Below are positions 35,924-59,300 of a stretch of DNA of 64,000 nucleotides, one piece after another. Every line of letters begins with the position of its first letter. Within the stretch, counting starts at the first letter, position 1. Position numbers and translations under genes: made by a program. The stretch comes from Vitrella brassicaformis CCMP3155 (lineage: Eukaryota > Protista > Chromerida). The notes under the pieces were generated by a model, which was not told the DNA's origin, made no database searches, and was given only the letters and a program-made list of their open reading frames with translations. Location of the stretch: assembly GCA_001179505.1 (NCBI GenBank), contig CDMY01000385.1, positions 248,001-312,000 on the forward strand, in the 5' to 3' direction.

Positions 35924-36043
35924 CGTCCTCAACTCGCTTGACTGAGGCGGCTGAACGGCCTCATCTTCAACGACAGCATCCAAACCTCCCTCAAGCTCGC
36001 AAGCTCGCAGTTTGCTCCCACTGCTCGCCTCGTCGCGTTCGCG

Positions 36044-37185
36044 ATGCGGCTCCATCTTGTTATTTGCGTGTGCTTCATCGCGGCAGCATGCTGCTTCCGG
36101 CCTCCTGCAGCTCGTCCTGCAGCAAAAGTCCGCAGCCTCATCGCTCCATCATCTGTGCGCCTCGCTGCGCAGCCGGCCGTCACTGCTGCTGCTGCTCCAA
36201 ATGAGCTGCCGGAGATGGTATCTGAAACCCCTGGCCTCGGGGATGTCCTGAAGGACCAGACATTTTATCGTGCTGGGAGCGGCGAGCCCGTCCAAGTGAA
36301 AGACCTGCTGGAGGAAGGGAAGCCGGCCATTGTTGTCTTCCTCCGGCATCTGGGTGAGTTGCTTGCACTGGATGGGGGCCTCATTGATGCGTGGGAGATA
36401 TATGTGCCCTCGATCCTGCTGCCGTGGGTCAGGCTGAGTGTACTGCTGGCAGCTGATGGAGGAGTTGACGGCGGCGCTTCCGGCCCTTGAGCGCGCCAGA
36501 GTGACTCTTCTCGCTGTCAGCATCGGCACTCCTGACAAGGCCAAGAAGCTGGTGGATGATCTGGGCTACCTCAATGACCAGATCTTGTTCGTTGACATCC
36601 CTCCTGACCTCAAGTGAGTGAATGTGAGGGGATGAGATGAGTGAGAGAGAACACATGATCCATCCATCACTCGCCATCCATCTGCCGACCGACTGGGACG
36701 GCGTGTTTCCTTCCTTCTGGTTTTGCTTTGCCTGTGTGTCAGGGCCTACCGAGCGGTTGGCCTCCTTCCCTCGTTCTTCACGAGGCCTCGTCGGGTCCCA
36801 CCCGATCTAGGTGGCCCCTTGCAGCTGCTGAACCCATTCCGATTCCAGGAGAATATCCGTGTCATCCGGGAGCAGTTCGACGCCTTTCTGCCGCGGAAGG
36901 AAATCGCTGACAAATGGCGCCCCCGCCCCTACGCACCCACACAGGTAGACGCGTATAGCCGCCCTCACGCACCGCACATGATGCGATTTCCATTGTGGTG
37001 TACGCTATGCCCCGTCGTGTGTTGCGTGTATCGCCCAGGTCAAGGCGGTATCCCAGCAAGGTGGCGCTTTTGTCTACGACTCGAAGGGAGAGCTGATCTT
37101 CGCTTCTCGCGATCGCATACCTCCTGAGTATGTGCCTGTGCCTGAGCTTCTCGACATTGTGGGCGTCAAGACAGCTGCTGCATAA
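36044..37185 (+). CDS. AhpC/TSA-2 (PRXL2/SelU-like) thioredoxin-fold selenoprotein with UxxC; signal peptide plus Phe-initiated plastid transit peptide; 4 exons
   Basis: Exons are 36044-36353, 36433-36613, 36743-36944 and 37039-37185. The splice ctg g|gc TGA gtg tac tgc gives VVFLRHLG-U-VY-C-WQ. The frame stays open through VSIGTPDKA and QQGGAFVYD to TAA at 37183. Confidence 0.9.
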
Positions 37186-37353
37186 GCTGTGGGTGTGTCG
37201 TGTGTGGTTTTTCCGCTGTGGGGGCTCTGCTGATGGCAGAGAGAGATGATCCCTGATGGCCAGGCGAGATAGACGGACCGCATTTGTTTTGGCTGAGTGA
37301 GAGGCATGGCGTGCAGCCTTGCCCGTGTGCTGTGCATGTGTGTGTGCCCTTCT

Positions 37354-37404
37354 GTGACGGCTGGTCGACAAGTCCATGTGTCTGTGGAATCGGTCTGGCC
37401 TGAG
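37354..37404 (+). promoter_or_regulatory. Putative SECIS element (type II, GUGA...UGAG core)
   Basis: GUGA at 37354 is followed by a stem ggcuggucga/ucgg-u-cuggcc (10 bp with G-U pairs and one bulge), unpaired AA at 37370-37371, an apical mini-helix ucca/ugga, and UGAG at 37401. It lies in the 3' UTR of the UGA-containing gene. The outer helix I is weak by eye. Confidence 0.7.
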
Positions 37405-37617
37405 AGTGTCTCGCTCCCACTGATCTCCTGTGCCGGCGGGGGAGGGAGTGCAGGCAGGGGCGCACCACTGTGCTCTGGGGTGTGCTGTGTGGACACGCTT
37501 CTCGCCAATCTAAATGCATTCATTCATTCACTGTCAGGTCACCATGTAGACGTGTAGCGGAAAAAACCCCAGAGAGATCCGCACATATCATTAATCACGT
37601 CCTTTCACTGACCTAGC

Positions 37618-40249
37618 TTAGCTGGGCAGCTGCACTCTCCCCTTCCCTCCCTTCAGGGAGCTCTTCTTCAGGAACCTCATCTTCCGTTTGGTCATGCCCT
37701 TCGGCATTTGCAGCTGGCCCATCTGGCTGCCAACCTCGCTGTCAAGCCCCTCCTCAATGTCGTCACCATCAGCATCCTCCCCTCGCCCAAGGCCGAGCTG
37801 CTCCCGCTCCTTCACAATGGCCAGCAGCCCATCGTCGTCATCACCTTCATTGTCAGCCACATCTCTCCCGCCATCCTCCCCCTCTGCCAAGCCCCTCCAC
37901 CCCGACTCCGCTGATGGCGGCATCTCCACATGTCTCAGCTTGCCGGTGCAGAAGTGCTGCACCACCATCCTTGCCGTTCGGAAGAGGTCCGGCTGCCCGC
38001 CTTTGCCCCCACTGTGGTACCCTCGCACGTGGGCCAGCGCCGTCAGGAAGGTCTGCGCGTCCACCCTGCCGGTGCGCAGAAATGAGCGCTGAAGGGCATC
38101 GAGCATGGGCTGATGCGCGGCCAGGTGCCGCCCTCCCTGCTGCTGGTGTGTGTCGCTGCTGTCTTGGTCGCGTGTTGGGAGGGCTTCCGGTAGGTAAGTA
38201 GCGAGCAGCTCGGGCGTGATCTTGTCGCAGACCAGCTGGACGGGGGGGAGAAAGTCGCCCCTGATGCATACATAAGGGACAGCCAGAAAGAAACGCATCT
38301 GCACTAGGTAGATACTCTCTTGTGCCAGGAGGTGGATCTACCTGAGCGATTCGACAGGAAGCACCCCGTTTATGACCAAAGCGGCCTTCGACGCGACGAT
38401 CGACGGAAAGACCAAACCTGCACACCGCACATATTCAATGCAACACATCCATCCATTCTGCACGTATCAGGGAATGCACACACCACACTGGTTTGTGCAC
38501 TTTGTCTGATGTGACCCTACATTACCTGGGCAGTCGCAGATGATGATCTGGTAAGCGGGCAGGTGGAAGGTCTGGAAGTGCTTGGTCTTGCCGGGGGTGC
38601 GGCTGACCGCCACCCTCTTGGCCTTCACAAGCGCATTGATGAGGCTGCTCTTGCCCACGTTCGGGTAGCCCACCATGCCCACCGTGTACATCTCCTCTTC
38701 TGCAGCACCGCCCTCCCTCCCTCCCATGTCCTCCTTCCTCAGCCCTGCCACCCAGGTTTTGAGGTACTGCAGCAGCTGCTCGCAGCTGAGGACGTCGGTG
38801 CCATCCCCGACGTATACCTCGTCCTCCAGGTTGCCGTAGCCCGTGTTGATGTCGAGATCCAGGTCGGCCAAGAACTGGTCGGACGGGGCGAGGGGCTGGG
38901 GGTGGTTGGAGGGGCCCGCACCAGGCGATGGGGATGACGATGGATGGTGGAGGCGCGCGGGGTCGTCCTTGACGGAGAGGCCGGAGCGGCGTAGCTCACG
39001 CAAGGCCGAGAAGAAGATCACCGGCACGCCCTGACCAAGGCAGAGAGGTTGGGTGCGTCCGAATGTGTGTGACACGCATGTGTGAGTGTCAGATACCCAC
39101 CTGCTTTTGGAAGTAGTGGACCCACTGTCTCCTGATGTCCCTGGAGAGGAAGTCGGCCTTGTTGAGCACCAGCAGGGAGTGCTTGCCGGTGTTCATCTCC
39201 TTGACGTACTTCTCCAGGTCCCCACACCGGTAGAACAGGGGGTGCCTGGCGTCGCATATCTGGAGGACGATGCGGCTCCGCTCAATGACCCGCCACAGCT
39301 GCCGCCACACCTCGATGTTCTTCTCATACGGCGTCATCACCTGGCCCTGCGCCTCCTCAATGTGCGCCAGACGACGCCGCCAGGAGAGGAAACTCTGCTG
39401 CTCGAGACGGTCGAGCTCCGCCGCACTGATGCCGCCAGACCCCTCCTTTGGGCCCTTGCTGTCCTTCCTGCGTCTGGGAGTGTGCCGAGACTGTGGGTAT
39501 CGTGGTCCTGGGGCTGGGTAGGGGGGTTGAGCTGGCTGAGAAGGGGGCGAGGATGCGGTCGCCACTTGATCTTTTGCCGCGTTGGTGGGACTATCAGCAG
39601 CCGCATCAGCATCCTCCGATGGCTCGTCGTCCTCGCTCTCGTCCTCATCATGCGCATCCTCACCCTCCTCACCTTCTGATGCGCCGTCGAGGCCCTCGTC
39701 GCCGCCGAGATCTCCGCCATCGATGTCAGACTCATCGACATACTCATCATCGAACACATCGTCATCCTCACGGTCGTCACCGTTGGCATGTGGCGCAGGC
39801 AAGGGCTCAGCAGCAGCTGCTTGGCTGTCGGGAGGGGGGTGGTCGGCCGCGTCACTCGCTTGCTGCTGATGCCTCTTGAGGAAGTTCATGGGCCGTCTTG
39901 GTATTGGCACACTGATCTCGCTGACGCCGCCATACAGCCGTCCCTTTGGCGCCGCCCTGGGGTGCTGCTGCGGGTGGTCTAACGACACGACCATGGTGCT
40001 GCGGTGCACCTCCACCTCATGCTCCTCCTTCTGCGCCAGCACCGACTCTAGGTACTCATCTAATGCATTCCGCTCGATGATGGACTTGAGGTTCTTGGTG
40101 CCGCCAGTGGCTGATGTGCTGTGGAGATTGAGGTCAAGGCTGTGCTTGCCAGCGGCACGGCTATCGATGGCTCGGCGCTCCTTGTCGCGAACAAGCGCTT
40201 TGCCGAGTGCGCCGCTCGAACCACTCTTCTTTCCTTGAGGCTTCGGCAT
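37618..40249 (-). CDS. LSG1: Large-subunit GTPase 1 (circularly permuted GTPase)
   Basis: Motifs are LGKAL, MTPYEKNIEVWRQLWRVIERS, DARHPLFYRC.DLE.YV, LVLNKADF, VGMVGYPNVGKSSLINAL, VSRTPGKTKHFQT and DCPGLVFPS. Confidence 0.97.
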
Positions 40250-40434
40250 GGTGGGGACGCCGTCGGATCTATGCTGCCTTTCCTTGCCCCCCGCGATCCC
40301 ACCTTTGCAGAGCTCGCACTTCGCGAACTCAAGGCCGCAACGGCGGCGCCGTCTTGAGGACAGCTGCTACCGATAGAAGCCGAGAAAAAGGGAATCGGTA
40401 GCTCTTTCCTTTCGATATACTTTTTGGTGTTTCG

Positions 40435-43016
40435 ATGGGGCGGTGGCTGAATGTGGACATCATTGTCAACGATTTGCTGTACGTCTGCAAAGCATGCCTA
40501 ATCATCACGGGTGTGTGCGTCGGCGGGCTGTTCTTCATAACAATAGGATGGATAATATGGCCGGTCAGTCAGCACGCACACAGTTGTCACATCAATCAGG
40601 GACGCCAGAGCCCTCAACACGACTCTTCTGTAGCTCTGTGGACTCTGTGTTGTCATTTCCAGGTGATTTATGTCGTGTCTGAGGCTCTCTGCTACTGGAG
40701 ATGGCGATACCGACTGGCGCTGCTCAAGTCCCTCCCCCCCTACCGGCCGCCCGTCAGCCAGGAGTGGATCGAGATGTGCGAGACGGCCATGCTGGAGGAC
40801 CACACGGCCGAGGAGCTGCGGATGCTGCTGTATTATTGCTTCTACTGTGTCTGGCCGGAGCAGATCGGCCGGAGGGACGTGGAGAGCTTCTTCATGTACC
40901 ACTTCCCCACGTCATGGGAGCACATTGAGTGGTTTGTGGACCAGCTTGAGGACAAAATGGGTCAGTTAGCGCGGCAGAGGGGAGAACAAGGGCTCGCAGA
41001 GCCGACAAAGGATGGATGAGCAGTGAATGGATACATACGTGTGGGTGTGGGCGATTGCTGCCATGTCATTCATCGGTTTGCAGGCATCCGTTTCCCTCAT
41101 GTTCGAAGCACGACGATTCCGTCGCAGTGTCCGCGGACGGGCGACCCCATGCTGTTGCAGGACGCCTATTCGCGCATCCACGGGTACCGATTCGGTATCC
41201 ACCCCATCAAGGCCATCTACCGGCCCCTGCCGTTCCTCATAGCCATCAACCTGTGGCAGAGCTTCAGCCTATGGATACTCAAACGATACGGATTCAAGAC
41301 ATACGAGTAAGTAAGCAACGGACGGAGGGAGGGAGGGAGGGAGGGAGGGGGCAAACAGGGCGGGCACTCGGTGGGATGGATGGATGGATGTCTTGGTTTT
41401 GGCCGGTGTGGTTGGTCTGCTGGGGCTTCTTGTGCAGAGTGCCGACGAATCAGTTTGTGCGTTTCCACATGTGGATGCCGCCGAAGCACTTCGACGTCCG
41501 GCGCGACCGAGAGCGCAGTGTGCCAATCGTCGTCCTGCACGGCCTCGGTTTCGGCCTCATCAACTATGTCTTCCCCACACTCAAGCTCATGCAGCTGATG
41601 CGCACTCAGTCCCCACGGCCCCGGGGCTACGGCCGGCGATTCGCCCCGGCCCCCGTGTGTCCTCGGCCGGTGATCGTGTGCGAGATGAGCATGATCGGGG
41701 GTTATCCCAGCGGTGTGGCCGACTTCCGGCAGCTGCCGACAATGCCCCAGATCGCCCATTATGTGGCCCAGTTCGTCTACGCCCACTTCTCGCCGCCCAC
41801 CCCATTCGTCCCGGAAGAGGAGTCCGAGACCATCGGCGGGGGTGGTGCCCTGTCGATCTCCCTCCCCCATGGGCCATCACCTGGCTGGGAGGACGTCAAG
41901 TCCGCCCTCACAGGCACGGCATCGACGGCCATCGGCACGGACTCTCCGTCGCCTCTGTCGTCGGTGGTGTCGCCCCACACGGATGCCGAGGGGGAGTTGC
42001 AGAAGCGGGGGACGTTCTTCAGCGCTCACAGTGGCACGCTGACGACTCAGAACACTCTGGACGAGGACAGCCCGACACTGCGGCGGCGTGAGGAGGTGGA
42101 GAGGCAGAGGGAGAAGAAGCGTCGGGCTGAGGAGGCCCGGTCGCTGTTCGGGTGCGGCTATCGCAGGAAGCGCCAGGTGGACAAGGAGGAGGAACACGTG
42201 GCCACGCTCCGCTTCGTCCCCGACCACCGGAGAAAGGGCGTACACATGGATGTCGTCTCACACAGGTGAGGTGCACTCGGGTAGTGAGTGGGAAAAGGGC
42301 TCGCTCGCTTTGCTTGCTCATCTTATCTTGCTCGTCGCGCTTCTCTCTCTCTCTCTCTCTCTCTGTGGGGGGGGGGGGGGGNNNNNNNNNNNNNNNNNNN
42401 NNNNNNNNNNNNNNNNNNNNNNNNNNNNNNNNNNNNNNNNNNNNNNNNNNNNNNNNNNNNNNNNNNNNNNNNNNNNNNNNNNNNNNNNNNNNNNNNNNNN
42501 NNNNNNNNNNNNNNNNNNNNNNNNNNNNNNNNNNNNNNNNNNNNNNNNNNNNNNNNNNNNNNNNNNNNNNNNNNNNNNNNNNNNNNNNNNNNNNNNNNNN
42601 NNNNNNNNNNNNNNNNNNNNNNNNNNNNNNNNNNNNNNNNNNNNNNNNNNNNNNNNNNNNNNNNNNNNNNNNNNNNNNNNNGGGGGGGGGGGGGGGTCTG
42701 TCTTATATTTATCAGTTTCGGCACGGCGATAACGTCGATACTGCAAAAGCAGTACCCGTCGTTGATTCGGCGGTGTGTGCTGGTCGACCCCGTATGTTTT
42801 TTCGTGCTGCCCTTGAAGAAGGCGCAGCTGGGGTACCTCTACCCCTGGGAGATCAACCTGGTGGACCCACCTCACGGGAGGGGCAAGGGGCTCTTCGCCC
42901 TCATCAGGAGACCCCTCGAGAAACTTTATGACTTCAGGTCTGTCACTCAGGAGACGGCAGGCATTCAAATATCTGTCTGTGGGGGATGCATCGCCGGAAG
43001 AAAACCATGGATGGTG

Positions 43017-56396: not shown

Positions 56397-59300
56397 ATGG
56401 GCAACGGAGGCAGCGCAACCGCCCAGCCATCTCGGGCCCCCTCAGTGGCGCCAAACCAGGACGAGCCAGAGGAGATGTCGTCAGCGCCCACCCAAGTGGA
56501 CCCTCAGATCAACGTCAGCGGCCGCCTCTCCTTCGCGCAGAAGGGCCTCCCGCACTATGGCGTGGTCGTCATTGTGCTTCGTTCATCTCCCGACAGCAGG
56601 CGCCCTGACCCTGTTCGCGTCAAGCTGCAGCAGAGTTTCCTGCAGATCTTGAAGGACAACCGGCGGCTGACGTGCCGGCTGGTCAAGCCACGGGGCGGGT
56701 ACCAGTCGGCAGGCCTGCTGGTGGTGGCGGTTGGGGCCGTCGAGGACGCACTGCCCCCAATGGCGGAGGAGCAGGAGGTGGTCAAGCAGACGCTCACGGG
56801 CAAGTGGACCACCTTCAAGAAACACCTTATGCCGCTCCTCAAGAACGGGTGGGTGAGAGGGGGAAGGCGGCGCTGCAGACACAGTGACGGGAGCGTGGAG
56901 GCCTGTCTGTCTGTCTGTTTTGCCTGCTCAGTGACGATCTGCCGAGGCTGTTCACCCCTGCTGAGACCGTCGAGCTGGTCCGCCGTGAGCTCTACGCCAT
57001 GAGATACTCACACGATGCGCCGTATCAGAGCTTCGCCGTAGGCAAATACCGCGCACCACCGACTGTTGCATTACCCCGATGTATCGGTTATTTATCCTTC
57101 AGGGTTTGCGTGTGATGGACGTGTGTCACCAAGCGGGCGCCATAGAGGCGGACGACGTGTTCCCTGTCCACCGCCGGGAGATCCTCGCGGACGTGGCCGC
57201 TAACTGGAGGATAGCCAGACAACCACTCAAGAAAGTGGTGAGAGCCAAACTCACTGACACTGACACAGACAGATGCATGTCCGCTGGATCGATGTGTGGA
57301 TGGATCGACAGGTGCACTACTTCGGTTTCCCGATGGGTTACTACTTCGCCTTCCTCAACGTCTACAGCAACTGGCTCATCTACCCAGCCGCTCTAGGCAT
57401 CATATTCTTCCTGGCTGATCTCATCATGCCGCACCTCATGCCCTGGGCTGTCGGCCCCGAAAAGCAGACGCCCACCGGGCCCATCTTCGCCATCATCATG
57501 GCCCTCTGGAGCTCAGTGTTTGTCGAAAGCTGGAAGCGACAGGTGCGGTGCGATGCCATGCGGCTGCGGCAGCACCCATTTGACATCGCACTGAGTGAGC
57601 CCTCTGTCTGTCTTGTGCCTATGTGGTGCAGATCAACACGTACAGGTTCCGGTGGGGCGCTTGGCGGGGCTTCTGGCACTCGAGGGAGAAGTCGGGGTCG
57701 GCAGACTGGCCCGCACACTTCAGACTGCTCAGGTTGGTCTGACTAACTGACACGACAGAACCAAGCACAGGGGTGATGCACCTCACTCATTCCTGGTCTC
57801 ATCTTCCTTCTCGGCCTCACATCACACACTCAGGGACATGCGGATCCACCCCGCCGAGGACCGTGAGCTGCTGAACCACCCCAAGTTCCATTTCCTGTTC
57901 CAGGTGCGGGAGCAGACCGAGAGGGCCCAGGCAGCTATCACAGGCATCGCGCGGAGCATGACGGGCACCACGGAGCTGTTCAGCCACCAGCGGCAGAGAC
58001 GTCGCACATCTGGGAGCCGCATTCACCTCACTGCAGCTGCCGAAGGGGTCTACTGGAAGTGAGTGGGGATGGGATGGGATGGCTGGAGGGGAAGGGAGAG
58101 CACCTCACCTCACCTGGCTGACTTGGTTGATTCGTTGGTGCGTTTAGGCACTTGGGCATCTTGCTGGCCGTCCTCCTGATCATGGCGTCCACGGGCTTCA
58201 CCGTATTCTGCTTGCTGGAGCTGCAGGAATGGGTCAAGTAAGTCGTGACAGACAAAGAAAGAACGACACACCGACGGACTCTGATGTGAGTGACATGACA
58301 TCCACTGTGTACGTCTTGTGTTGTCGTGGTCACGTCACAGCAAGAAGACCTCCAACGGTCTGTTGACCCTCTTCCCGACTGTGCTCTATGTCATGCTGGC
58401 CATCGTCCTGCAGGTCAGCCAGCTCACAACACGAACCCACACACACCATCTGCAGCCTTTCCCCCCTGCTCTGCTTGTGTGCCTTGTGTTGTGTGCCCTC
58501 AGAGCTTCTACACTCAAGCTGCCTCATTCCTGACCAGCCTGGAGGGCCACCGCACGATCTCTCAGTACCAGTCTTCGTTCGTGGTCAAGAACGCCCTGTT
58601 TCAACTGCTCAACTTCCTGGGCTACTACATCTACCTGGCCTTCGCCGCCAAGAACCTCAAAGAACTCTCCACACAACTATACGTCTTCTTCATCGTCAAA
58701 CAGGTCGGTCAACCAGCCGACCAAAGCCACCCAGGCGAGGCGTGCCACACGCACACACAAGTTGTGTGCGTCGTGCCTGCAGGTGTTTTTGAATCTGATG
58801 GAGCTGGTGCGGCCGTCGGTGCAGTCGATGCTGCGCAGTGAGGCGACCTCCCCCGCCCTCGACCTCAATAACCCTCGGCGCGAGCCCCTCTATGGCCGCA
58901 TTATGAAGGAGGCATCACTCGCGCCATCCAACGAGTCCGACGAGTACCTGGAGCTGGCGGTGCAGTTCGGCGTAACGGCCATGTTCTCAGCGGTGTTCCC
59001 CCTAGCCCCTCTGTTTGGCCTCGTCAACAACCTGCAGGAGATCAGAAGCGACTCATTCAAGGTGGGCTGGGGTGGGTGGGTGGGTGGAGGGCAGCCAAGG
59101 GGATGTATGGGCGTGGCCTCACTAGTGTCTTCGCTGCACTGCTCTGCATGGCCGGTGTGGTGTGTGCTGTGCTGTGCTGCAGGCTTGTCGGTTGAGTCGG
59201 CGTCCATTCCCGTCGAGTGAGAGTGTCTATCAGAGCTGGGTGGCCGTCTACGAGGGGCTTTCCATTGTCGGCGTCGTCTCCAACTGCGCACTGCTCGGTC

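What the first reader, a model, noticed from the sequence alone, without database searches (positions are those of the whole stretch)
37354..37404. SECIS-like hairpin with a non-AUGA (GUGA) core in that gene's 3' UTR
About 170 nt after the stop there is a GUGA...UGAG quartet, a 10-bp helix II (ggcuggucga / ucgg[u]cuggcc), unpaired AA and a ucca/ugga apical mini-helix. This is the established type II SECIS geometry. GUGA cores are a known minority variant. The element independently supports Sec recoding. Helix I is weak by manual pairing.
Basis: partly seen in the sequence, partly recalled or inferred. Interest (0 to 1): 0.7.

Follow-up and report, generated by a model that had tools for sequence, protein, structure and literature searches.

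The report
SECIS hairpin of Vitrella SelU-like gene
The hairpin is very probably the real RNA signal that lets the alga Vitrella brassicaformis read an internal UGA as selenocysteine in a SelU/PRXL2-like redox gene. It is an ordinary element of a well-known kind, and its only oddity is a missing local basal stem.

Summary
At 37354-37404 (+) lie GUGA...UGAG, a 10-bp helix II with one bulged U, unpaired C-AA-G and a 5-bp apical mini-helix.

The hairpin starts 168 nt after the TAA of a four-exon AhpC-TSA_2 (SelU/PRXL2-like) gene. That gene has an in-frame TGA in an HLG-U-VYC motif. The genome is Vitrella brassicaformis CCMP3155, a chromerid.

- **In the mRNA:** spliced transcript contigs end in poly(A) at 37528-37530, so the element lies inside the 344-nt 3' UTR.
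- **Unlikely by chance:** 21 of 3000 shuffled UTRs gave an equally good SECIS-like hairpin, and it is the only such hit on the + strand of the 64-kb window.
- **Paralog:** a paralog on another contig keeps the TGA at the same codon. Downstream it carries a hairpin of the same geometry. The flanks are conserved, and 5 of 10 helix II pairs are changed on both sides yet still pair.
- **Machinery:** tRNA-Sec and SepSecS are present.
- **GUGA is the majority here:** 7 of the 10 SECIS elements I collected in this genome use it, and a paper reports the same for green algae and sponges.

Weak points: Rfam SECIS_1 and two covariance models built here do not score the hairpin, but they also miss other SECIS elements of this genome. 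It also has no strong local helix I.

Earlier notes of this scan describe GUGA-type SECIS elements in other Vitrella genes.

The parts
36044..36353 (+). Exon 1 of the SelU/PRXL2-like gene. It holds an N-terminal presequence and the first thioredoxin-fold strand, and ends in ...VVFLRHL-G(1st base).
   Evidence: ORF and GT donor. The splice junction is confirmed by transcript contigs L078-L081. The exon is 58% identical over 53 aa to the paralog's exon 1.
36435..36437 (+). In-frame TGA read as selenocysteine, in the motif HLG-U-VYC (UxxC).
   Evidence: In transcript L080 the upstream 112-aa ORF ends at this TGA, in frame with the 168-aa ORF. The paralog has TGA at the same codon and the same intron phase.
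36433..36613 (+). Exon 2.
   Evidence: Weak exon-level Pfam hits to AhpC-TSA and AhpC-TSA_2.
36743..36944 (+). Exon 3.
   Evidence: It is 100% identical to residues 54-120 of P0001 = CEM08632.1.
37039..37185 (+). Exon 4, ending in TAA at 37183-37185.
   Evidence: PF13911 profile positions 90-113.
37186..37529 (+). 3' UTR, about 344 nt. The poly(A) tail is added at 37528-37530.
   Evidence: Transcript contigs L080 and L081 match the genome up to 37530 and 37528 and then continue as A-runs that are absent from the genome.
37354..37358 (+). 5' half of the SECIS core: GUGA plus C.
37359..37368 (+). Helix II, 5' arm: GGCUGGUCGA.
   Evidence: Constrained fold. Pair probabilities of 0.74-0.95 in the unconstrained 191-nt ensemble.
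37369..37372 (+). Unpaired C-AA-G, the conserved AAR motif. The AA is at 37370-37371.
37373..37388 (+). Apical mini-helix (helix III): UCCAU / GUGGA with the loop GUGUCU. This makes the element type II.
   Evidence: Pair probabilities of 0.94-1.0.
37390..37400 (+). Helix II, 3' arm: UCGG[U]CUGGCC, with one bulged U.
37401..37404 (+). 3' half of the SECIS core: UGAG.
37407..37456 (+). Predicted second hairpin directly 3' of the SECIS. This is an inference from folding only.
   Evidence: It is in the MFE and the centroid of the 191-nt fold. An analogous extra hairpin is predicted in the paralog.
37325..37350 (+). Predicted 5' strand of a basal stem, the substitute for helix I. Inference only.
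   Evidence: The z-score of the whole fold is only -0.61.
37457..37486 (+). Predicted distal 3' strand of that basal stem. Inference only.

Best explanation
The hairpin at 37354-37404 is a eukaryotic type II SECIS element in the 3' UTR of a Vitrella brassicaformis SelU/PRXL2-like (AhpC-TSA_2) mRNA.

The proposed mechanism is as follows. The G.A/A.G tandem of GUGA...UGAG forms the kink-turn-like core that SBP2 binds. Helix II (10 bp) places the unpaired AAG and the apical mini-helix at the standard distance from the core. The complex then recruits eEFSec carrying Sec-tRNA[Ser]Sec to the ribosome. As a result the UGA at 36435-37, about 700 nt upstream in the mRNA, is read as selenocysteine in the UxxC redox motif instead of ending translation.

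Shown here: the sequence and geometry, the position inside the polyadenylated transcript, a homologous hairpin in the paralog, and the presence of tRNA-Sec and SepSecS.

Inferred: SBP2 binding, actual Sec insertion, and the way the basal stem (helix I) is formed.
For: - **Geometry:** the hairpin matches the SECIS descriptor RUGA-N / 10-bp helix II / AA 12 nt after the core / mini-helix / N-GA-N.
- **Same layout as other elements in this genome:** two GPx, SelT and five deiodinase-like SECIS elements, found independently in 3' regions of genes with in-frame TGA, have the same geometry. Five of those eight use GUGA.
- **In the mRNA:** two spliced transcript contigs carry poly(A) at 37528-37530, 125 nt past the element. 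All four contigs contain it at 100% identity.
- **Chance:** 21 of 3000 UTR shuffles gave an equal hit. It is the only + strand hit in the window and the only RUGA...AA...GA candidate in the UTR.
- **Paralog:** the gene at G000:C635 keeps TGA at the same codon and intron phase, reading FLRHLG-U-PFC. Its exons are 37-67% identical. Downstream it has a -21.5 kcal/mol hairpin with GUGA-C-GG...AAG...CC-N-GAGAG. Helix II compares as 4 identical pairs, 1 one-sided change, 5 two-sided changes and none broken.
- **Machinery:** tRNA-Sec scores 71.6 bits with anticodon UCA. SepSecS exons are present.
- **Literature:** GUGA_AA is the common pattern in several algae and a sponge (PMC3473315). The core consensus is UGAN/KGAW (PMC3753652).
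Against: - Rfam SECIS_1 gives no match at E<=10 on 37100-37700.
- A covariance model built from the GPx elements scores the hairpin below 8.5 bits.
- A model built from the paralog's element scores it 9.1 bits, E 3.4, rank 11 in the window.
- These tests lacked power. Rfam sees only the two GPx elements, and both are below threshold. The GPx model gives the SelT element 6.3 bits.
- The hairpin is the weakest of the ten elements: -14.5 kcal/mol, three G.U pairs and a bulge.
- It lacks the C-R-C-G-R flank and the strong local helix I that the eight GPx, SelT and deiodinase-like elements share.
- The last core base is G, not the A/U of the published KGAW consensus. The GPx elements share that G.
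- With only two paralogs, 'compensatory' changes are partly built in, because both hairpins were picked for pairing.
- No functional data exist.
Confidence: 0.87

Rival explanations
1. The hairpin is a chance structure. Either the UGA is a true stop and the annotated 168-aa product is the real protein, or Sec insertion depends on some other element.
For: - Public and home-made covariance models do not score it.
- The local 101-nt fold does not form it.
- It has the weakest energy and lacks the flank motif of the other elements.
- The descriptor does produce background hits, about 1 per 90 kb of strand.
Against: - The region upstream of the TGA is conserved as protein in the paralog (58% over 53 aa, E 1.5e-17), and the TGA itself is conserved. 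A SECIS is therefore required somewhere.
- The 344-nt UTR holds no other RUGA...AA...GA candidate.
- The chance of an equally good hit in a UTR of this composition is about 0.7%.
- The paralog has the same kind of hairpin with conserved core flanks.
Confidence: 0.07
2. The hairpin belongs to the overlapping 3' ends of the two convergent genes. It would then act in 3' end formation, or as an antisense or stability element, and resemble a SECIS only by accident.
For: - The minus-strand neighbour's coding sequence ends at about 37618-37620, only 432 nt from this gene's stop.
- Unstranded Logan contigs L078 and L079 run through both genes.
Against: - On the minus strand the element reads CUCA...UCAC, which is not a SECIS core.
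- The hairpin lies 125 nt upstream of the poly(A) site, not at it.
- The paralog on another contig, in a different neighbourhood, carries the same hairpin type.
- This reading does not explain the conserved GUGA/AAG/GAG letters.
Confidence: 0.04

Closest known systems
Eukaryotic type II SECIS element (Rfam RF00031 SECIS_1; SECISearch/SECISearch3 model)
   Same: - 3' UTR location.
- A UGA...GA core able to form tandem G.A pairs.
- Helix II of about 10 bp.
- An unpaired AAR at the standard distance from the core.
- An extra apical helix.
- It serves an in-frame UGA at a redox UxxC site.
   Different: - G instead of A before UGA, and G after the 3' GA.
- No strong local helix I.
- It scores below detection with RF00031, as do most SECIS elements of this genome.
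GUGA_AA-type SECIS elements of green algae (Chlamydomonas, Ostreococcus) and the sponge Amphimedon (PMC3473315)
   Same: The same GUGA...AA pattern. It is used as the commoner form within one organism rather than by one gene family.
   Different: The host here is a chromerid alveolate. I found no paper in the searched library that mentions Vitrella together with selenoproteins.
Other SECIS elements of the same genome: GPx x2, SelT, five deiodinase-like elements
   Same: The same order and spacing of parts. The start of helix II is shared: RUGA-N-GGCUG in the GPx elements and in three of the deiodinase-like elements.
   Different: Those elements have a conserved C-R-C-G-R directly before RUGA. 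It tops a strong local helix I, and total constrained energies are -36 to -44 kcal/mol. The candidate has CCCUUCU there and reaches -22.7 kcal/mol.
SECIS of the SelU-like paralog (G000:C635, L100:2002-2050)
   Same: - Homologous flanks: UGCCCYUCY-GUGA-C-GG and CC-N-GAGAG.
- AAG motif, 10-bp helix II and a mini-helix.
- No local helix I.
- A predicted distal basal stem enclosing a second hairpin.
   Different: - The paralog's helix II has no bulge and is more stable, at -21.5 kcal/mol.
- Its mini-helix is 3 bp.
- Its distance from the stop is uncertain because of a 300-N assembly gap.
SelU / PRXL2 (AhpC-TSA_2, PF13911) selenoproteins. From my own knowledge, Castellano et al. 2004 described these in fish, birds, echinoderms, green algae and diatoms.
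   Same: The host gene has PF13911 and U in the first position of the UxxC motif.
   Different: Exon 3 (67 aa) has no detectable relative outside Vitrella among 1.84 billion representatives. The public model CEM08632.1 starts after the UGA.

Membership tests
Eukaryotic SECIS element, type II | Lies in the 3' UTR of an mRNA that has an in-frame UGA | tested here: met
   Spliced, polyadenylated transcript contigs cover 36018-37530. The TGA is in frame between two ORFs, and the element lies 168 nt after the stop and 125 nt before the poly(A) site.
Eukaryotic SECIS element, type II | Core quartet: 5' (A/G)UGA-N ... 3' N-GA-N, able to form tandem sheared G.A pairs | tested here: met
   GUGA-C ... 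U-GA-G. The last base is G, where the published consensus KGAW has A/U. The GPx elements of this genome are also UGAG.
Eukaryotic SECIS element, type II | Helix II of about 9-14 bp between the core and the conserved unpaired As, with little bending | tested here: met
   10 bp with one bulged U. The AA starts 12 nt after the core, against 11-16 nt in the other nine elements.
Eukaryotic SECIS element, type II | Unpaired AA(R) in the apical loop or bulge | tested here: met
   C-AA-G is unpaired in the constrained fold and in the unconstrained 191-nt fold.
Eukaryotic SECIS element, type II | An additional apical helix (helix III), which separates type II from type I | tested here: met
   UCCAU/GUGGA with a 6-nt loop, pair probabilities 0.94-1.0.
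Eukaryotic SECIS element, type II | Helix I below the core | tested here: inconclusive
   Only 2 adjacent pairs plus scattered pairs form locally. A distal basal stem around a second hairpin is predicted, but the fold is not better than shuffles (z -0.61). The same layout in the paralog has z -2.9.
Eukaryotic SECIS element, type II | Reaches the curated score of the family model (RF00031, 35 bits) | tested here: not met
   No match at E<=10. In the control, none of eight other SECIS elements of this genome reaches 35 bits and six give no match at all. The model therefore does not fit this lineage.
Eukaryotic SECIS element, type II | Binds SBP2 and directs Sec insertion at UGA | not testable with these tools
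   This needs a reporter, EMSA or 75Se experiment.
Eukaryotic SECIS element, type II | The organism has the Sec-decoding machinery | tested here: met
   tRNA-Sec at 71.6 bits (cut-off 47) with anticodon UCA. SepSecS exons cover profile positions 3-371. SBP2 and eEFSec were not searched.
SelU/PRXL2 (PF13911) selenoprotein, as host gene | AhpC-TSA_2 thioredoxin fold with Sec in the UxxC/CxxC redox motif | tested here: met
   PF13911 on P0001. Collinear exon-level hits. The motif is HLG-U-VYC, and U-PFC in the paralog. I did not test here that U aligns with the Cys of Cys-containing homologues from other species.

The most novel reading that the evidence does not exclude
The two SelU-like SECIS elements of Vitrella may work without a conventional local helix I. 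In this reading the kink-turn core sits at a three-way junction, comparable to a 'k-junction'. The basal stem would be closed by a strand about 55 nt downstream, and a second hairpin (37407-37456) would be inserted between the 3' GA and that strand. The other SECIS elements of the same genome use a conserved CRCG-topped local helix I instead. This would be a distinct structural class of SECIS.
Probability: 0.25. Interest if true: 0.5.

Novelty: new member of a known kind. Interest (0 to 1): 0.25.

Why it matters
The result supports correcting a public gene model. CEM08632.1 (168 aa) starts after the UGA and lacks the presequence and the redox-active selenocysteine.

It also adds to evidence that this free-living relative of apicomplexan parasites has a sizeable selenoproteome served mostly by GUGA-type SECIS elements.

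On the practical side, the standard Rfam SECIS model misses most SECIS elements of this genome, so selenoprotein annotation in chromerids needs a lineage-specific model.

The possible junction-type basal stem is a small structural lead. It is not an established novelty.

Tried and rejected
- **Rfam cmscan:** run on the 3' region and on the whole window, with no SECIS match. The control showed the model also misses six of eight other SECIS elements of this genome.
- **Model R1 (two GPx elements):** too narrow. The candidate scored below 8.5 bits and SelT 6.3 bits. Its genome hits L018-L020 lack a UGA core. Alignments made with it for the other elements were out of register.
- **Model R2 (the paralog's element alone):** the candidate scored 9.1 bits, E 3.4, which is not significant.
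- **Multi-sequence model:** not built. MAFFT could not align the elements in structural register under any option or subset I tried.
- **Genome pattern RTGANGGYTG...:** found only the four input elements plus 3 doubtful hits, so GGYUG is not general.
- **Genome pattern CRCGRRTGA...AA...GA:** no better than its reversed control.
- **Pfam searches of the genome:** SelK and Sep15/SelM gave nothing, and PF13911 missed even this window's gene because the exons are short. No SECIS was found within the flanks fetched for the MsrA and SelO genes.
- **Transcript of the paralog:** not obtained. The word-based protein search returned only P0001 itself.
- **Alternative cores in the UTR:** by inspecting the sequence, AUGA near 37249 and GUGA near 37303 lack a complementary 3' arm or an AA. 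The descriptor scans found no second hit.
- **Minus-strand descriptor hit at 58859-58918:** rejected as chance.
- the exons were searched one by one, by reference.

Full report
**What is there**

The window is GC-rich, intron-bearing eukaryotic DNA. It is G000:C385 of a 72.7-Mb, 1064-contig assembly.

Exon 3 of the gene upstream of the finding is 100% identical to residues 54-120 of a 168-aa protein, P0001. The sources call P0001 CEM08632.1, 'unnamed protein product [Vitrella brassicaformis CCMP3155]'. The organism is therefore a chromerid alveolate and not a green alga, as I first assumed.

The gene has four exons:
- exon 1, 36044-36353;
- exon 2, 36433-36613;
- exon 3, 36743-36944;
- exon 4, 37039-37185.

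A TGA at 36435-37 sits in the motif VVFLRHLG-U-VYCWQ.

Pfam gives only weak hits per exon, but they are collinear: AhpC-TSA and AhpC-TSA_2 profile positions 1-43 in exon 2 and 90-113 in exon 4. PF13911 is on record for P0001.

I searched the exons one by one, by reference.

**The observation**

- GUGA 37354-57 and C 37358;
- GGCUGGUCGA paired with UCGG[U]CUGGCC, giving 10 bp with three G.U pairs and one bulged U;
- unpaired C-AA-G;
- a UCCAU/GUGGA mini-helix with a 6-nt loop;
- UGAG 37401-04.

The core starts 168 nt after the stop. Helix II plus the apex has -14.5 kcal/mol under the constraint.

A 101-nt fold does not form the hairpin. A 191-nt fold does, and its pairs have probabilities of 0.74-1.0 in the ensemble. 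The refuter 'no stable fold' is therefore not met.

**Is it more than chance?**

I wrote a SECISearch-like descriptor with these requirements:
- RUGA, then N, then a helix II of at least 9 pairs;
- an unpaired AA 10-17 nt after the core;
- a single branch;
- N-GA at the 3' end;
- energy of -14 kcal/mol or lower.

Results:
- 21 of 3000 dinucleotide shuffles of the 344-nt UTR gave a hit.
- The 64-kb window gives two hits on both strands together. One is the candidate. The other, 58859-58918 on the minus strand, folds differently and has z +1.
- In about 0.5 Mb of sampled genome there were about six unexplained hits, besides five known SECIS elements.

The thresholds were chosen after seeing the candidate, so a probability of about 0.5-1% per UTR is a rough figure.

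No other RUGA...AA...GA combination in the UTR passes.

**Is it in the mRNA?**

An exact look-up of P0001 gave four transcript-like contigs. All four are spliced exactly as in my model and contain the element at 100% identity.

Two of them, from JGI samples 3300017148 and 3300017297, stop matching the genome at 37530 and 37528 and continue as A-runs. The poly(A) site is thus about 125 nt downstream of the element.

In these transcripts a 112-aa ORF ends at the TGA, in frame with the 168-aa ORF. The public model begins only after the UGA.

**Other SECIS elements of this genome**

- Rfam SECIS_1 found one sub-threshold hit in the genome, 29.3 bits in the 3' region of a GPx gene. A second GPx has a near-identical element.
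- A SelT gene (YCQS-U) has a GUGA-type element about 120 nt after its stop.
- Deiodinase-like genes with in-frame TGA gave five more elements, two of them in tandem behind one gene.

All of these share the order of parts and the spacing of the candidate. Counting the candidate and its paralog, 7 of 10 have GUGA.

PMC3473315 reports that most SECIS elements of Chlamydomonas and Ostreococcus, and 12 of 21 in a sponge, are GUGA_AA. The core is ordinary for such lineages.

The Sec machinery is present. tRNA-Sec scores 71.6 bits and ARAGORN reads the anticodon UCA. SepSecS exons were also found.

**The paralog**

P0001 also matches G000:C635. That gene is collinear over all four exons, at 37-67% identity. 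This includes the part upstream of the TGA, which is 58% identical over 53 aa. It has TGA at the same codon with the same intron phase, reading FLRHLG-U-PFC.

Downstream, after an assembly gap, lies a hairpin at L100:2002-2050 with GUGA-C, a 10-bp helix II, AAG, a mini-helix and C-GA-G. Its energy is -21.5 kcal/mol and it forms in the unconstrained fold.

The flanks align with the candidate's: UGCCCYUCY-GUGACGG and CCYGAGAG.

Reading helix II outward from the core, 4 pairs are identical, 1 differs on one side, 5 differ on both sides, and none is broken.

With only two sequences, both chosen because they pair, this is supportive but not a formal covariation test.

**What does not fit**

- Rfam gives no match for the candidate.
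- The two models I could build, one from the GPx elements and one from the paralog alone, score it in the noise.
- These models have no power here. Rfam misses six of eight other elements. The GPx model gives SelT 6.3 bits.
- A proper multi-sequence model could not be made, because MAFFT would not keep the helices in register.

A second point concerns helix I. The eight GPx, SelT and deiodinase-like elements all carry C-R-C-G-R directly before RUGA. Constrained folds show that this motif tops a strong local helix I.

The candidate and its paralog have a pyrimidine run there instead, and no strong local helix I. In both, a 191-nt fold predicts the following layout:
- a basal stem closed by a distal 3' strand;
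- a second hairpin lying between the SECIS and that strand.

The z-score is -0.6 for the window and -2.9 for the paralog. This layout is a prediction only. I found no paper linking SECIS elements with three-way junctions.

**Verdict**

The hairpin is very probably a functional type II SECIS of a SelU/PRXL2-like selenoprotein mRNA. It is a new member of a well-known kind, and its GUGA core is the norm in this organism.

Earlier notes of this scan had already described GUGA-type SECIS elements in other Vitrella genes, including a SelU-like gene on another contig. I re-derived the relevant facts independently.

The one feature worth a bench test is the missing local helix I.

Noticed in passing
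L001:1506-1510, L013:3570-3574, L004:1220-1224(-), L028:2817-2821, L033:646-650(-), L029:98-102(-), L032:195-199(-), L030:636-640(-): Eight SECIS elements of this genome (two GPx, SelT and five deiodinase-like) share C-R-C-G-R directly 5' of RUGA. Constrained folds show that it tops a strong local helix I. The two SelU-like elements lack it.
   Followed up: partly
L100:381-1389 (G000:C635:288980-289988), SECIS at L100:2002-2050: A paralogous SelU-like gene has TGA at the same codon (FLRHLG-U-PFC) and its own GUGA-type SECIS. A 300-N assembly gap (L100:1618-1917) lies between its stop and the SECIS, just after a GUGA-containing stretch that may be a cut-off element.
   Followed up: partly
L029:49-97(-) and L032:146-194(-) (G000:C386:43204-43252 and 42805-42853): Two similar GUGA-type SECIS hairpins lie about 400 nt apart behind one deiodinase-like gene. 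A third, near-identical one follows a paralog at G000:C638:10484-10531.
   Followed up: no
window 36044-36437: The public protein model CEM08632.1 (168 aa) starts at the Met after the UGA. It omits about 130 N-terminal residues, including a hydrophobic, Ala/Arg-rich presequence and the Sec.
   Followed up: partly
window 36744-36944: The 67-aa product of exon 3 has no detectable relative outside Vitrella among 1.84 billion representative proteins. Only the paralog matches it, at 37% identity. It fills the gap between PF13911 profile positions 43 and 90.
   Followed up: partly
window 37530-37620 and 37618-40301(-): A convergent minus-strand gene (807-aa ORF in contig L078) ends its coding sequence at about 37618-37620. 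Unstranded Logan contigs join it to the SelU-like transcript, so the two 3' ends may overlap. Its last exon has no Pfam match.
   Followed up: partly
window 58859-58918 (-): A SECIS-descriptor hit with a CGCGA-GUGA flank. The unconstrained fold pairs the flank differently and has z +0.99. I take it to be chance.
   Followed up: yes
L003 (G000:C104:163717-164091, -): An Rdx-family gene has Y-C-V-G-C, with Cys rather than Sec, at the redox motif. The two TGAs reported inside the match are probably intronic.
   Followed up: no
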